Shown piece after piece: positions 21,844-27,978 of a stretch of DNA of 64,000 nucleotides. Within the stretch, counting starts at the first letter, position 1. Each line of letters starts with the position of its first letter. A model generated the notes under the pieces. The model was not told where the DNA came from. It worked only from the letters and a program-made list of their open reading frames with translations, and did no database searches. Origin of the DNA: Guillardia theta CCMP2712 (lineage: Eukaryota; Protista; Cryptophyta); NCBI RefSeq assembly GCF_000315625.1, contig NW_005434640.1, positions 476,452 through 540,451 on the forward strand. The letters run 5' to 3'. Position numbers and translations under genes: made by a program.

Positions 21844-23033
21844 TTACGCGACATCCCCAAACATGAGCTCTGCTGCAGGCTTACCGTCAGCGTAAGTCGT
21901 GATGTTCATCTTGACCCCCGTGAAGTTGAATGTGTATCCCAGTTTCACGTCCTGTGGCCACTTGGCAGTCACTCTTGTCTTCATCTCATCGTCGCTGTAG
22001 TAGTCCTGGTAGGGTCTGTGCCCCGAGTCGTTGTGCATCACAAACCCCAGCTTACGGTAGACGGCCAGGAGTTTCCCCGTGGGGTCGATCCGCATTAAGA
22101 TCGCCTGGAAGTCTCGCTGGAAGTGCTCAACTCGGCCGAGGAAGTTGAGCCCTGGCCGACCCTTGGAGTCGTAGATGAGAGGGTATTGCTCATACTCCGT
22201 GTGGTACCCGCACCCTCCGCGCCCCTTGTTGAAGAGGAACTGTCTGAAGCTGCAGTACTTTGCCGCAAGCTCTTTTCTTTTCTTCAAGTCCTTGACAGCC
22301 AGCTGCCTCCTTTTCAGCCCGTAGCTCCAGAAAGACACTGCGCGATCCCACCTAGGTAGAACAACTCACAGGTGAGATGCATAGGCCAACGGCGAGCAAG
22401 CTCACGGGTTTCTTGTGAAGGCAAAAGAGAAATAAGATGGATTCTTCACACACTTCTCGGATATCTTGAAATGTTTCATCCTTGAGGTTCAGCAGTCACA
22501 AGAACGCGTACTGCGGCATCCCTAAAACCTCACCTTTGCTCTTTGGTGTCGCATGTCGCATTTTCAGTTGCTGCACAAAATATATCTGCCAGGTTCTCCG
22601 CGACTGAGCTTCCAGCGTTCTTAGGAATATGCAGAAGCATGGCCTTCCAACGATCGTTCATGTAGCACAAAAAGTACATCTGCGGCTGGCTGGTCTTGGA
22701 ACCATCGGGACCAGGATGGGTCAAGTTGCCGAAGTCCAAGGCACGCATTGAGTGTGATTCCGCATCGTCACTTGCACTCTCTTCCAGTTCCTTTCGCTGA
22801 CCTTGTTCACCTGCTTCTTGTTTCAGCCTCTTCTTGCAACAGCAGAGAGCTGCCAACCTCTCGGCGCTGATGGCGACAACTTGCCGGGTGAATAGTTGGG
22901 AATCGAAGCTGCGAGGGAAGTCAGAGCGAGGATGTCTGCATGCGCTCCAATGCTCTGACCTGGATCGATCAGTTTCTGCTCTTGTAGTAGAGGCTAAGAT
23001 GCAAGGGTCAAGAGTGAGCAATAAGAACCTCAA
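21844..23033 (-). CDS. Sulfotransferase family protein (carbohydrate sulfotransferase-like); 5' end uncertain
   Basis: 5'-PSB motif LLHIPKNAGSSV; 3'-PB motif FAFTRNP/WDRAVSFWSY across an intron; NFLGRVEHFQRDF. Confidence 0.85.
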
Positions 23034-23531
23034 ACCTCAACTTACAACTCGGTGGAGCTGATGGTTGTTGGCCTTGTCTGAAACAGGAATAGTAATGGTT
23101 ACAAGCACCTTTCGTGCAAAGAGATTAGCTTGTAGACGGCATGATGAAGATGTACCATGACAGATGCCAACCAGGTCATGACATGTTTCTTCAACATTTT
23201 CCGTGGTACTCCTAATCTCTGCTCTCCCCCAACGACATTGAAACCCTTACAACTCTGCTGTAAGTCCTCAAGTAATGCGCAGAGCCTCCTTGCTCATGAT
23301 ATCGACATCCTGTGGCGCCATCGACGTATCCGATGCGTTTGCTCGTCTCTTCCCTTGCTGTTCCCTCGCTCCTACGGATGACCCCTTGAGGAGAGGAGGA
23401 GGGTTCCTGCTAAGGGGGGTGCTGTCCCACTGTCTCTGAGTTGGAAGGTGGAGGGTGTGTGGGGGGATGCGGGGGGATTCAATCAATATGGTCTACCATC
23501 TGCGTGGATCACATCAGCGACCCTTCGAGCG

Positions 23532-25241
23532 ATGAAAATGCTGAGGGCGGTGGCGGCGGTGATGTGGGTGGGGCTGATGGCGGTGGAAGGAAAGCAGGTA
23601 ACAGGAGGGAAGGGAGAGTATGAAGATACCTCTCATGTCGCCTCCAGATCCTCTACCAGCCCTCCAAGTCTTCCACCTTCGTCGCCAGGGAAGAGCTTCC
23701 TTTCACCATCCAGTACGCAGGTAGACGAGCAGCGTGGTTCTGCGAACCCTCTCCTGCTTCCAGGCAGCATGACAGCATGATTCACAGACGCCAACGCCAT
23801 TGAAGCCATCACCTGCTTCGACTACGTGCAGGCAAGTTCTGTCAGTGCCCCTCCATGTCCAGCTGATCTTGATGCAGCTGGGCCATTACAAGGCGCGGGT
23901 GCCCTTCGGCTGCTTTCTGCGAGCATCGACACCCCTGCTCAAGAACGTGGACGGAGTCGCAGGGTTTGGTATCCCCAAAGTCGGTGCCAATGGCGAAAAG
24001 CTGCCGATGCCTCTGCTGTGGGCGCTGACGGACCCGAGGAACGTGGAGAGCAACGCTCGCGGGTTGAAGAGGAGGTACACCTTCTTCGCGTCCAAGGACC
24101 ATGGAGAAGTTCAACTGGGGGGATATGACCCGCAGTCAGTGGAGGGAGGAGAGATGAAGTACTTCAAGTCGCTCTCCTCCGGTGAATTCGTTCTTGGAGT
24201 CTCGTCGATCCGTTTGGGAACTTCACCGGAGAACGCAGTTGAAGTTTTGCGATTTCGAGATGAAGATGACAAGGCAATGGATGAAGCTGGTGGCGAAGAT
24301 GTCGTTCAGGCAGAGGACAACAAGCGCAACGTCATCCCAGCTGTGCTCGATACAGGTCAGGGAGAGCGTCGAGCTGTCACTGAGCTTCTTGTGGGCTGAC
24401 TGGAAGTGCAGGAACCTCGTGCCTGGTGCTGCCGTCCAACGACCACGGGGGGCTGCTGAAAGAGTCGCCATTCGAGATCTTTGTGAAGCACTTCCGCCAT
24501 CCTCCCTCTCTCTTCAGTGCAGCTCACGCGAAGATGATCAACGAAGGGCTCAAGTCATCCGGCAGCAACGTCTACATGACTGTCAACGGCGAGGAGATGG
24601 TTCTCCCCTACGAAAGCCTGCTGATCACAGGGACGGACAAGCCTTGCGTTCGAGGGTCGCCGCCTCTGCAACAGGGCAGCATCATTCTGGGGGATGTGTT
24701 CTTCAGGAACTATGCCGTCTTGTTCGACATGGAACATTCATCGAGGGTGGAGCCAGCCACCATCGGCGTCGCAAAGATCAACGCGAACTACAAGATCATC
24801 CCCGAGTCGACTCCCATCATCCCCGTTAACGAGCTCGGCGAGCCTCTTGTGCGCATGCACGTGCATCGGGGAGTAGACAAACTGCCGATCGAGGACAACT
24901 CGCAGGGCACTCAGTACTTCGTGCAGCTCACGATCGGTACTCCCCCGCAGCTCTTCAAGTTGGCCTTCGACACGGGCTCTTCTACTCTCGGTGTTTTCGT
25001 GGCACCGCCGACCATGAACGACGTCATGTCCGAGGAGCTTGGCAGGCCCATCCCGGTGGTTCCCCAAGAGCTCATGAAGCAGGAGGCTCTCCTCCAGACC
25101 AAGGCAAGAGCCTTTCGTGCCCCCCCCGCGACGTCGCTAGTCCCCTGGCTTGTGCTGAGCCTCTTTGGCATTGTCGTCGTCGTGCTGCTGGTGCGAGAGA
25201 GGAGGCGAAGGATTGTAGACCCCCCCTATGATGTTCTATGA
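23532..25241 (+). CDS. Membrane-anchored pepsin-family (A1) aspartic protease, apparently circularly permuted
   Basis: Signal peptide; introns 23598-23647, 23721-23787, 23832-23877 (GC-AG) and 24356-24411. Motif order: YQPSKSSTF, IQYADA, FGC, DGVAGFG, GEVQLGGYD, LDTGTS, ILGDVFFRNY..FD, then YFVQLTIGTPPQ..FDTGSS, TM helix, YDVL. Confidence 0.9.
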
Positions 25242-25320
25242 TAAAACCTGAGCTGGAATGTCAGCTCGTCGGTCTCTTCCGACAGAAGGCCTGGCGAGGT
25301 CAAACGCAGGCAGTAAGTTG

Positions 25321-27978
25321 TCAGTCAGGCGATGTTGGTGCAGGAGTGAGGGGAGGAGGATGAAACTCTCCGACTCGTTTGATCTCATCGCATGTGCCGG
25401 GCATGACAGGCGCAATAACGTCAGTCAGCCACATCGAGCCTGAGGGGTCAGGCGAGGGAGCGAGGAGAACCGAGACGAGCTCTCTGCCCCCTGTAACACA
25501 CACAAAGCTCGAGCGACAACAGATTGACAGTGAAGGATGGAAGGAGATCATGTTCCAGGTGCCTTTGCGATAATATTCAGATAGATTCAAGCACGTAGTT
25601 CATCTTGCATTTGAGCTGCTCCCATTGCATCTATTCATGTATAGTACAATGATGGTCTCGTGTAGGATCCGAGTGATGAACGAGACTCGATTCAGCTGCG
25701 CTTGGAGGTTGTGACGCGTCGCGAGTTGTGGCCAACTCTCAAGGGAGCAAGCGAGTGATCCGACGAGGTCACATCAAGACCAGCCGTCAACAGTGACCAG
25801 CTTTACTAGCAGCGCCATCTTTCATATCACATCCTCCACAAGGTCTTCCTCGTCCTCGGTCAGCTCGTTGTCATTCACAGCAACAGGCGCATCTGGCTCT
25901 GCTCTCTCGACTTGTACCGTCTCGTCTGACACGAGGTCCTTGCCAGGTAAGCTTGCTTCGACATCCTTGGCGGAATCAGTCTGCTGGCTCTCTGCTTCGT
26001 GCAACAGCAAGATTTCTGCACTCGCGTCCTCCTCCTCCTTCTTTTCTTCTTTGCTTGTCGTGCATTCCTGCACTTCTGCATCCCTCACACCTGCCGGGGA
26101 CTTGGCGACACTCTTCCCCACTGAGAGAGAAGCTGCTGAGGGTTGAGGAGAGCACAAGGAGAGAGGAGGCTGGACGTCCTTGCTTGGAGTCTCGAAGGTG
26201 ATGTCAGACTTGTTCTCCTCGTCGCTCTCACCTGCCAACGAGCTGTGAAGAAGAATCGCGACAAACGCGTCAGAGAATCACCGACATACGCAGCACCCTC
26301 GTCCTCCTGCCACTCGTCACCATCGTTGGTTTGTTGCTCCGCTAACTCAGGTGGATCTAGGATGGTCTTATCAGCACGGCATCCAAGCCTTCAACAAGCC
26401 TCACTGTCTGCCTCCCGCTCTTCGCTCCCTTCATCTGTCGCACCTGCCATTCCTTCACTGGTCAGCAGTTCTCATGGCAATGAGCCTCAACCTGTAGACC
26501 CCTGAGCTTGCAGAGCTTCGAGGCGCTTCTTCGCTCTCAGTCTATTTTCTTCGATTCTCTTGAGCACATCATCCGAGATGCTTGACGCAGGCTTCTCGTC
26601 ACTGTTTCTTTCAGCGCTACTCTCCTCTTCTGCATTCGAGTTTAGACCGAGCAGACGCTTCTACTCTCACAGCGTTACCAACGTACTCAGCCGCCACATC
26701 TTCCTGCCACTCTTCCTGCTGCATGTACTGGTTGGGGTCCTCAGGCTCCTCTGCGTCAGCATCAGGTTGTCGCTTGACACTCCTCGCTTCACAGTGCTAC
26801 CATCGTCATCCTCCTCCAGTGAGACCATCGCTTGCGGGGCCTCGCTCCCTGTCCCAGCATGCTTCTGCTGCTCCTGGTCTTCTACTGGTCCTGCTTCAAA
26901 CGCGGTGGATTCCCCGGCTGATTCCTTGCCATCCTTGTCTTCCTTGTATTTGTCCGCCTGCCCCCATGTCACGGGACGCCAGCAGGGGAGAGTTTCGACC
27001 TCCACTTCACGGTATGCGTCGAGCGCTCGTTGGATCATGAACGTGTTTCCAACAGATTCGACCTGATGCAGCGTCAACCGACTGGGAGCCAACGAGACAG
27101 AAGCCACCTTGAAGATTACGTCATCGAAAGACAGGGCTGGGCAGAGCTGGTATGCCCATTCCTGCCAAGGGCAGGTCTTGTCAGTAAGATGTACGAGAAG
27201 CTTGTGTCGGAGAGACCTGGTACTTTGACATCATCAACTTCAAGTCAGTCTTTTCGTGTCCCTTTCCTTTGAACTTGGTGTCACGGAAGATTCTTTCAGG
27301 TCACAGAGTTAGAAGTCACAGCCTCGTCTGCTCTGCACAAGTCACCGGTAAAGTTTCGTAAGGCCGTCTGGTGAGATCAACTTCTCTTGAAACGCCTGCA
27401 AGTAGCAACGTCATGACCTGTGCCGGGAGGAAGGAGCTCAAGTCTTTACGTTCTTGTCCAGTCTTGCTCGCTTTCTGATATTTTGAACGATTCAGAGCAC
27501 AGACAAGTAAGCATTACACACAAGAGAACCTCTTCTTGGAAGTCTTTTCATCCTTGTCCTTCTCTTCCTGATCGTCTTTCTCGCCATCTTTTGATTTCTC
27601 TTCATCATCCTGCGTCGTCAATTCTTTCAGGGATGAAATGCTTCAAACCTCGCCAACCGCCTCCATCTCACTCCCTCCAGCTCCGACTATATCCAGCTAA
27701 CTATATCCCTCCACTCTGAATCTGACATTTCGGAATTGTCTGATTCTACAGTCTTATATATTACCATCCTTCAACTCCTCCACGCTTTTCCTCTCCTTTC
27801 CATCTTCGCTTTTCCCTCGATTCCCTTCTCTCGTTCCCTTCTCGTCCCCTCGTGCATTGTTCCTCTCCTCCTCTCATCATCTTCTGCTCTCCTCCTCCTC
27901 TCCTCTCACCTCCTGGCTCAGCATCTTGCCCAGCTCCGCGAACGGCATGTACGAGTGCGCCGTTCTTGCAAACGCCAT
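25321..27978 (-). CDS. Large acidic low-complexity hypothetical protein, multi-exon
   Basis: ATG at 27978 (MAFARTAHSYMPFAELGKMLSQE then a GT donor); acidic ORF pieces 26667-27107 and 25822-26238. 3' end uncertain. Confidence 0.5.

What the first reader, a model, noticed from the sequence alone, without database searches (positions are those of the whole stretch)
23532..25241. Naturally circularly permuted pepsin-family protease
Seen: after splicing, the signal peptide is followed directly by ILYQPSKSSTF, the flap (IQYADA), FGC, DGVAGFG, GEVQLGGYD, catalytic LDTGTS and ILGDVFFRNYAVLFD..IGVA, which normally ends a pepsin. A ~45-aa linker then leads to LPIEDNSQGTQYFVQLTIGTPPQLFKLAFDTGSSTLGVF (QYFV.. 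begins ~24912), a TM helix and a YDVL tail. Known: in A1 proteases PL.N....QY...I.IGTPPQ.F...FDTGSS is the mature N-terminus carrying the first catalytic Asp and comes before YDPSKSSTY. Inference: the first ~45 residues have moved intact to the C-terminus, keeping both DTG aspartates and losing the N-terminal prosegment. The linker piece LVRMHVHR resembles the first prosegment strand. The result would be a membrane-anchored protease with a YxxL sorting signal and perhaps no zymogen step. The junction lies inside one open exon (24412-25241), which argues against a splicing artefact.
Basis: partly seen in the sequence, partly recalled or inferred. Interest (0 to 1): 0.92.

Follow-up and report, generated by a model that had tools for sequence, protein, structure and literature searches.

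The report
Circularly permuted membrane-anchored pepsin-type protease
This expressed algal gene encodes a pepsin-type protease whose normal first ~45 residues, carrying one of the two catalytic aspartates, sit at the end of the chain beside a membrane anchor; a large protist family shares this order, and I found no paper describing it.

Summary
Confirmed. The five-exon gene (23532-25241, 496 aa; genome matches Guillardia theta) is spliced as modelled, and one RNA contig runs from the ATG across the junction. After the signal peptide comes pepsin ~52-326, a 32-residue linker, pepsin ~1-44 with Asp32, a stalk, a membrane helix and a YDVL tail. All five A1 hallmark motifs are present; Trp39 is Gly. 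About 25 loci of this genome belong to the family; the 20 with a detectable first segment all carry it last. Over 150 near-full-length relatives (some redundant) share the order, in five cryptophyte genera plus Ancoracysta and Andalucia. AlphaFold models of two relatives are confident (pTM 0.90, 0.89) and match pepsin 51/52-326 at 2.0-2.5 A; I could not measure the Asp-Asp distance. Refinement: the prosegment was probably not simply lost. A shortened remnant seems to sit in the linker, reduced here to one strand (suggestive only). Most likely an active endosomal/lysosomal protease born by tandem duplication and trimming. No solved structure or paper found with this order. The scan noted the same family earlier on other loci of this genome. 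The joined spliced protein was not searched or folded.

The parts
23532..23597 (+). Exon 1: signal peptide (about 20 aa, predicted cut after AVEG) plus KQ
   Evidence: RNA contig starts at 23529; orthologues P0004, P0337, P0338, P0331 have hydrophobic leaders ending at the same place
23598..23647 (+). Intron 1, GT-AG, 50 nt
   Evidence: joint in X1 and X4
23648..23720 (+). Exon 2: new N-terminus, pepsin ~52-76; flap Tyr75 equivalent at 23714-23716
23721..23787 (+). Intron 2, GT-AG, 67 nt
23788..23831 (+). Exon 3: second flap strand
   Evidence: 79-93% identical to orthologues
23832..23877 (+). Intron 3, GC-AG, 46 nt
   Evidence: (46-nt skip, cut can slide 5 nt onto GC..AG)
23878..24355 (+). 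Exon 4: rest of N-lobe (VAG psi-loop motif, pepsin Gly122, within 23950-23970), interdomain strand, start of C-lobe with catalytic Asp215 equivalent at 24349-24351
24356..24411 (+). Intron 4, GT-AG, 56 nt, splitting the Gly codon of the C-lobe DTG
24412..24776 (+). Exon 5, first part: remainder of C-lobe, ILG psi-loop motif (24684-24692) and the strand that normally ends pepsin (IGVAK 24762-24776)
24777..24872 (+). Linker joining the old C-terminus to the old N-terminus; holds the prosegment-like strand LVRMHVHR (24846-24869)
   Evidence: strand E344-352 in model of P0338
24873..25001 (+). Moved segment, pepsin ~1-43; catalytic Asp32 equivalent at 24969-24971; Gly in place of Trp39
25002..25136 (+). 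Stalk, about 45 aa
   Evidence: family median 45
25137..25193 (+). Predicted transmembrane helix (mean hydropathy 2.9 over 19 aa), followed by RERRRR
25194..25241 (+). Cytosolic tail ending in YDVL (25227-25238) and stop

Best explanation
A type I membrane aspartic protease of family A1 with a circularly permuted fold. SHOWN: gene structure, expression, order of segments, conservation of both aspartate motifs and of the order across a family. INFERRED: the chain enters the ER by its signal peptide; pepsin 52-326 folds, the linker leads back from the old C-terminus, and the last segment (pepsin 1-44) slots in to finish the N-lobe, bringing Asp32 next to Asp215 under the Tyr75 flap, so the chemistry is that of pepsin. 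The membrane helix anchors it and the tail YxxL sends it to endosomes, lysosome or vacuole, where it cuts luminal or membrane proteins. In this gene's subfamily only 15 residues separate the prosegment-like strand from Tyr14, leaving no room for an inhibitory prosegment body, so it is probably active once folded and acidified. INFERRED origin: one old tandem duplication of a signal-pro-A-B gene, trimmed to signal-B-(pro remnant)-A, with the cut in the surface loop at pepsin 44-51.
For: RNA joints and one spanning contig. Family profile gives two stretches on solved pepsins in swapped order, e.g. chymosin 51-321 then 2-44. Models of P0338 (77% identical to exon 5, 68% to exon 4) and P0038: pLDDT 91/90, pTM 0.90/0.89, moved segment 94-97 with three strands; first part superposes on pepsin 52-326, Z about 22-23, 2.0-2.5 A. 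D[TS]G kept in 120 of 125 (C-lobe) and 124 of 125 (moved) aligned members, flap Tyr in at least 109. Membrane helix in 104 of 119; tail YxxPhi in 53 against 20 expected by shuffling. 20 loci of the genome have the head last, none first. 61 permuted rows separate from 15 ordinary rows with support 100.
Against: No activity data. Covariation was too shallow to show contacts (Neff 112). Trp39 and the Cys45-Cys50 loop are gone. The two models disagree on which linker strand is ordered. Prosegment homology: hhalign E 0.26, no A1_Propeptide hit. The tree lacks BACE, plasmepsin V and A1B outgroups. Location is inferred from a motif only.
Confidence: 0.8

Rival explanations
1. Permuted zymogen that is matured to two chains: the linker keeps a prosegment role, its strand first fills the slot of the interdomain sheet, and a cut in the linker lets the mature N-terminal strand swap in. 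The product is a small membrane-anchored chain with Asp32 holding a large soluble chain with Asp215. This differs from the best explanation only in activation; it is more likely for the members with long spacers than for this gene.
For: Strand then spacer then D-R/Q-I-P-I-x-N pattern in most linkers; spacer longest in Andalucia, Ancoracysta and other deep rows. BLASTP aligns an ordinary prosegment start with a family linker (RVPMQKL against RVPVQKL). Profile built only from ordinary zymogens: 6 of 27 linkers at p<0.05 against 1.4 expected. The P0338 model orders the prosegment-like strand, the P0038 model the mature-type strand. In pepsinogen the prosegment forms part of the six-stranded sheet (PMC4077824).
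Against: In this gene the spacer is a single Gly, with no basic helix to block the cleft. Profile match not significant. The model difference may only reflect a poorly aligned linker.
Confidence: 0.25
2. The moved segment completes the fold in trans, in a domain-swapped dimer on the membrane.
For: The linker is long and flexible (pLDDT under 60 in part); only monomers were modelled.
Against: Monomer models are confident; pepsin's N- and C-terminal strands lie in the same central sheet (established knowledge), so 32 residues suffice in cis.
Confidence: 0.06
3. A catalytically dead or nearly dead binding protein with a pepsin fold.
For: Trp39 is Gly/Ala in 120 of 123; a few paralogues have lost the motifs (C226 DTS, C19, C9:1007k).
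Against: All five hallmarks used to call an A1 protein functional (PMC4079213) are present here; active BACE has Trp39Ala (PMC3116508); both aspartates are near-invariant over sequences only 25-40% identical.
Confidence: 0.08
4. Assembly or gene-model artefact: two neighbouring gene pieces, or a missed upstream exon.
For: RNA contigs of run X1 break and lose depth at 24770-24850.
Against: Single open exon; spanning RNA and DNA contigs; no other head segment in 64 kb; same order in 20 loci and in independent transcriptomes and metagenomes.
Confidence: 0.01

Closest known systems
Pepsin / cathepsin D / renin (MEROPS A1A, Pfam PF00026)
   Same: Bilobed fold over residues 52-326 (Z about 22, 2.0-2.5 A), both D[TS]G motifs, both hydrophobic-hydrophobic-Gly motifs, Tyr75, signal peptide.
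   Different: Residues ~1-44 come last; no N-terminal prosegment; Trp39 is Gly; residues ~45-51 with the Cys45-Cys50 bond are absent; C-terminal membrane anchor; about 20% identity.
BACE1/BACE2 (A01.004/041) and oomycete BACE-like PxAP8
   Same: Type I membrane anchor; small residue at 39 (PMC3116508); PxAP8 has no propart; structural match Z 21.8.
   Different: Ordinary chain order in BACE; no Trp at position 80 after the flap Tyr here; BACE-type disulfides not evident; kinship not tested on a tree.
Plasmepsin V and nepenthesin-type A1B enzymes
   Same: Show that the stretch between residues 39 and 75 tolerates a large insert (PMC4079213), the same interval where this family's chain is opened; plasmepsin V is membrane-bound.
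   Different: They have an insert in a continuous chain; here the chain starts and ends there, and there is no Cys-rich insert.
Fungal yapsins (recalled from memory, not checked)
   Same: Membrane-bound A1 enzymes cut in a loop after the first aspartate into two chains, so a break near here is compatible with activity.
   Different: The break is made by proteolysis in an ordinary-order precursor, not encoded; GPI anchor on the large chain.
Swaposin (plant-specific insert of phytepsin)
   Same: The only circular permutation tied to aspartic proteases in the papers found (PMC3320104, PMC3179968).
   Different: It is the inserted saposin-like domain that is permuted, not the protease fold.

Membership tests
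A1 aspartic protease (hallmarks of PMC4079213) | D32-[TS]-G | tested here: met
   DTG at 24969, aligned to pepsin 32, but at the C-terminal end
A1 aspartic protease (hallmarks of PMC4079213) | Tyr75 in the flap | tested here: met
   IQYA at 23708-23719; family profile aligns this Tyr to renin/chymosin Tyr75
A1 aspartic protease (hallmarks of PMC4079213) | hydrophobic-hydrophobic-Gly122 and Gly302 | tested here: met
   VAG in exon 4, ILG in exon 5
A1 aspartic protease (hallmarks of PMC4079213) | D215-[TS]-G | tested here: met
   DTG across intron 4, splice confirmed
A1 aspartic protease | Bilobed pepsin fold | tested here: met
   models of relatives superpose on pepsin 51/52-326
A1 aspartic protease | Both aspartates meet in one cleft | tested here: inconclusive
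   high pLDDT/pTM, but no coordinates returned and aligners are sequential; covariation too shallow
A1 aspartic protease | Canonical order: Asp32 segment N-terminal | tested here: not met
   this is the variant feature
A1 aspartic protease | Proteolytic activity, pepstatin sensitivity | not testable with these tools
   needs an assay
A1A pepsin-type zymogen | N-terminal prosegment (PF07966) and Trp39 | tested here: not met
   signal peptide abuts pepsin 52; no PF07966 hit in 10 linkers; Gly at 39
A1B nepenthesin type | Cys-rich insert between Trp39 and Tyr75 | tested here: not met
   the chain ends and begins in that interval; no Cys there
BACE-like subfamily | Trp39 replaced by a small residue; membrane anchor | tested here: met
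   Gly/Ala in 120 of 123; membrane helix in 104 of 119
BACE-like subfamily | Trp relocated to position 80 and BACE disulfides | tested here: not met
   no conserved Trp after the flap Tyr in alignment A1; only two invariant Cys
BACE-like subfamily | Phylogenetic grouping with BACE | not tested
   no BACE sequence among the fetched proteins

The most novel reading that the evidence does not exclude
An undescribed, ancient eukaryotic branch of the pepsin family with a natural circular permutation, found in Cryptista, Provora and Discoba, which has wholly replaced ordinary pepsin/cathepsin D in Guillardia theta, and which carries its prosegment inside the chain so that some members are activated by an internal cut and strand swap while this gene's subfamily has lost the switch.
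Probability: 0.3. Interest if true: 0.85.

Novelty: new variant of a known kind. Interest (0 to 1): 0.72.

Why it matters
In the structures and papers searched, pepsin-family enzymes always have the Asp32 segment first. This family shows the fold can be opened at residues 44-51 and closed between its old ends while both catalytic motifs stay conserved across distant protists. Pepsin depends on its prosegment to fold (PMC4077824); a natural version with the prosegment cut to one internal strand tests directly how much of it is needed and whether chain order sets the folding barrier. It also exposes an annotation blind spot: databases label these only 'Peptidase A1 domain', and screens that demand the hallmarks in canonical alignment order would tend to drop them. 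It may be the only pepsin-type system of a whole algal group.

Tried and rejected
Upstream-exon and splicing artefacts: rejected. Alternative acceptors for intron 2 (23763, 23775) give stops; RNA picks 23787. The gene's own full-length product was not returned by three homologue searches or the representative search, so relatives were folded. Following the operators' note, I searched the spliced model exon by exon and left out every search or fold of the joined protein; scripts computed only exon lengths, phases and per-exon translations. No permuted chain among solved structures: all top matches stop at the old C-terminus. No viral match at E 0.001. The Atlas feature search gave only Asp clusters without taxa and the shape search only ordinary-looking fungal/animal clusters. 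Prosegment homology by Pfam and hhalign not significant; my linker motif count (83 of 104 against 12 shuffled) was tuned on the same data and shows conservation only. Covariation analysis inconclusive. Seven literature searches aimed at a permuted pepsin and a text search of the 2026 CIRPIN survey (supplement not held) found no description; the library lacks most subscription papers and MEROPS was not searchable.

Full report
Observation. The region holds a five-exon gene on the + strand: 23532-23597, 23648-23720, 23788-23831, 23878-24355 and 24412-25241, 1491 nt, 496 aa, with consistent phases and introns of 46-67 nt, the third GC-AG. Contigs of two RNA-type runs from different studies show all four joints, the DNA run shows none, and one 1503-nt contig of run X4 runs from 23529 to 25250, across the junction in question. 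The raw-read run gave only 32 reads, nearly all at 3' ends; those over this gene's 3' end lie on the + strand. In run X1 the contigs break and depth falls near 24770-24850, which I cannot explain, but X4 and the DNA run are continuous there. The neighbouring gene is transcribed the other way from about 23386, and a profile of the first segment of ordinary pepsins finds a single hit in the whole window, at about 24912. No upstream exon supplies an Asp32 segment.

Order of segments. Within the last exon, Pfam Asp positions 242-308 come first and positions 1-29 after them; against solved pepsins the same exon gives 253-317 and then 1-40. A profile of 125 relatives matches chymosin 51-321 and then 2-44. 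The protein therefore reads: signal peptide, pepsin ~52-326, a 32-residue linker, pepsin ~1-44, a 45-residue stalk, a membrane helix and a tail ending in YDVL. About seven residues at the break, including the Cys45-Cys50 loop, are gone. All five hallmarks by which PMC4079213 calls an A1 protein functional are present. Trp39 is Gly here, and Gly or Ala in 120 of 123 relatives against Trp in 18 of 18 ordinary ones; active BACE also has Ala there (PMC3116508), though the compensating Trp80 of BACE is not seen.

Family. About 25 loci of this genome match; in the 20 where the head segment was found it lies downstream of the rest, and none has it upstream; an ordinary cathepsin-D-like query finds only these loci. 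These counts are lower bounds. Among fetched proteins, 209 show the permuted order and 157 are near full length, with redundancy from cluster members. Named sources are Guillardia, Hanusia, Hemiselmis, Rhodomonas and Baffinella, plus one protein each from Ancoracysta twista and Andalucia godoyi; most are environmental. In 125 aligned members the C-lobe D[TS]G is kept in 120, the moved one in 124 and the flap Tyr in at least 109. A membrane helix follows in 104 of 119, with a YxxPhi motif in 53 tails against 20 expected. In a quick tree, built after putting database proteins into canonical order for comparison, 61 permuted rows separate from 15 ordinary rows with support 100; the window's orthologues form their own subfamily, and the Andalucia and Ancoracysta rows fall outside the cryptophyte-rich group. 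The outgroup is narrow (fungal and cathepsin-D-like only), so a single origin is allowed, not proven.

Structure. The joined product could not be submitted, so I folded P0338 (77% identical to exon 5, 68% to exon 4) and the more typical P0038. Both models are confident (pLDDT 91 and 90, pTM 0.90 and 0.89), with the moved segment at 94-97 forming the three strands expected of pepsin 13-42. Their first parts superpose on pepsin 51/52-326 at Z 22-23 and 2.0-2.5 A. The aligners are sequential and no coordinates are returned, so completion of the N-lobe by the last segment is a strong inference, not a measurement. None of the top solved-structure matches extends over the moved segment, so no permuted A1 structure turned up.

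The linker. Most members have a basic/hydrophobic strand, then a spacer, then the strand that starts mature pepsins. The distance from that first strand to the Tyr14 equivalent is about 29 in most members, up to about 60 in Andalucia and Ancoracysta, 32-79 in ordinary zymogens, and 15 in this gene's subfamily. BLASTP aligns an ordinary prosegment start with one paralogue's linker but not with this gene's; a profile from ordinary zymogens alone scores 6 of 27 linkers at p<0.05; hhalign picks the same register at E 0.26 and Pfam gives nothing. The two models differ: P0338 orders the prosegment-like strand and leaves the mature-type one loose, P0038 does the reverse. In pepsinogen the prosegment contributes to the six-stranded sheet (PMC4077824) and, from general knowledge, is replaced there by the mature N-terminus on activation. 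So a prosegment remnant probably moved with the head. This is what permutation by tandem duplication and trimming (PMC3320104) predicts: signal-pro-A-B-pro-A-B becomes signal-B-pro-A.

How it most likely works. Shown: expression, order, conserved catalytic motifs, anchor. Inferred: ER entry, folding in cis with the last segment completing the N-lobe, pepsin-type two-aspartate catalysis, delivery to an endosomal or lysosomal/vacuolar membrane by the tail motif, and, for this gene, activity without a prosegment-removal step (confidence 0.8 for an active permuted protease in cis). Rivals are maturation to two chains by a linker cut (0.25, compatible with activity, likelier for long-spacer paralogues), completion in trans (0.06), a dead enzyme (0.08) and artefact (0.01).

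Novelty. It works like an A1 protease and meets the residue hallmarks, but fails the canonical order and fits neither A1A, A1B nor the BACE subfamily by their defining features: a new variant of a known kind. Literature searches found only swaposin, where an inserted domain and not the protease is permuted; the library is incomplete, so a prior note in MEROPS or a subscription paper is possible. The scan's own notes record the same family at other loci of this genome; these are unchecked AI notes and not independent support. My reading, including the internal prosegment idea (note), was formed before I saw the notes that mention it.

Noticed in passing
window 21844-23386, - strand: Divergently transcribed, spliced neighbour (four CT..AC joints) whose transcript contigs start about 145 nt from the protease's; motifs look sulfotransferase-like by eye, but two pieces gave no Pfam hit.
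   Followed up: partly
window 25354-27107, - strand: Convergent expressed gene with acidic, low-complexity frames; its 3' end lies about 100 nt from the protease stop; no Pfam hit.
   Followed up: partly
L039 (C226), L040 (C9:1007k), L041 (C19): Paralogues with degenerate catalytic motifs (DTS in both lobes in L039; no DTG in L040, L041): likely inactive members of the permuted family.
   Followed up: partly
P0044, P0049-P0051, P0066, P0068, P0080, P0117, P0128: Several subfamilies have 60-130 extra residues between the signal peptide and the pepsin-52 start, possibly a newly gained pro-region; absent from the window's gene.
   Followed up: no
P0217, P0226: Database proteins holding two complete ordinary pepsin units in tandem: the kind of intermediate the duplication model needs, if not assembly artefacts.
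   Followed up: no
alignment A1 columns C202 and C277: The only two invariant cysteines: one just after the C-lobe DTGTS, one in the CVQ strand; probably a family-specific disulfide replacing pepsin's 249-282 bond.
   Followed up: no
window 24770-24850: In RNA run X1 contigs break and depth falls from 876 to 212 over the linker; not seen in X4. Could be a variant bubble, 3' decay or a shorter transcript.
   Followed up: no
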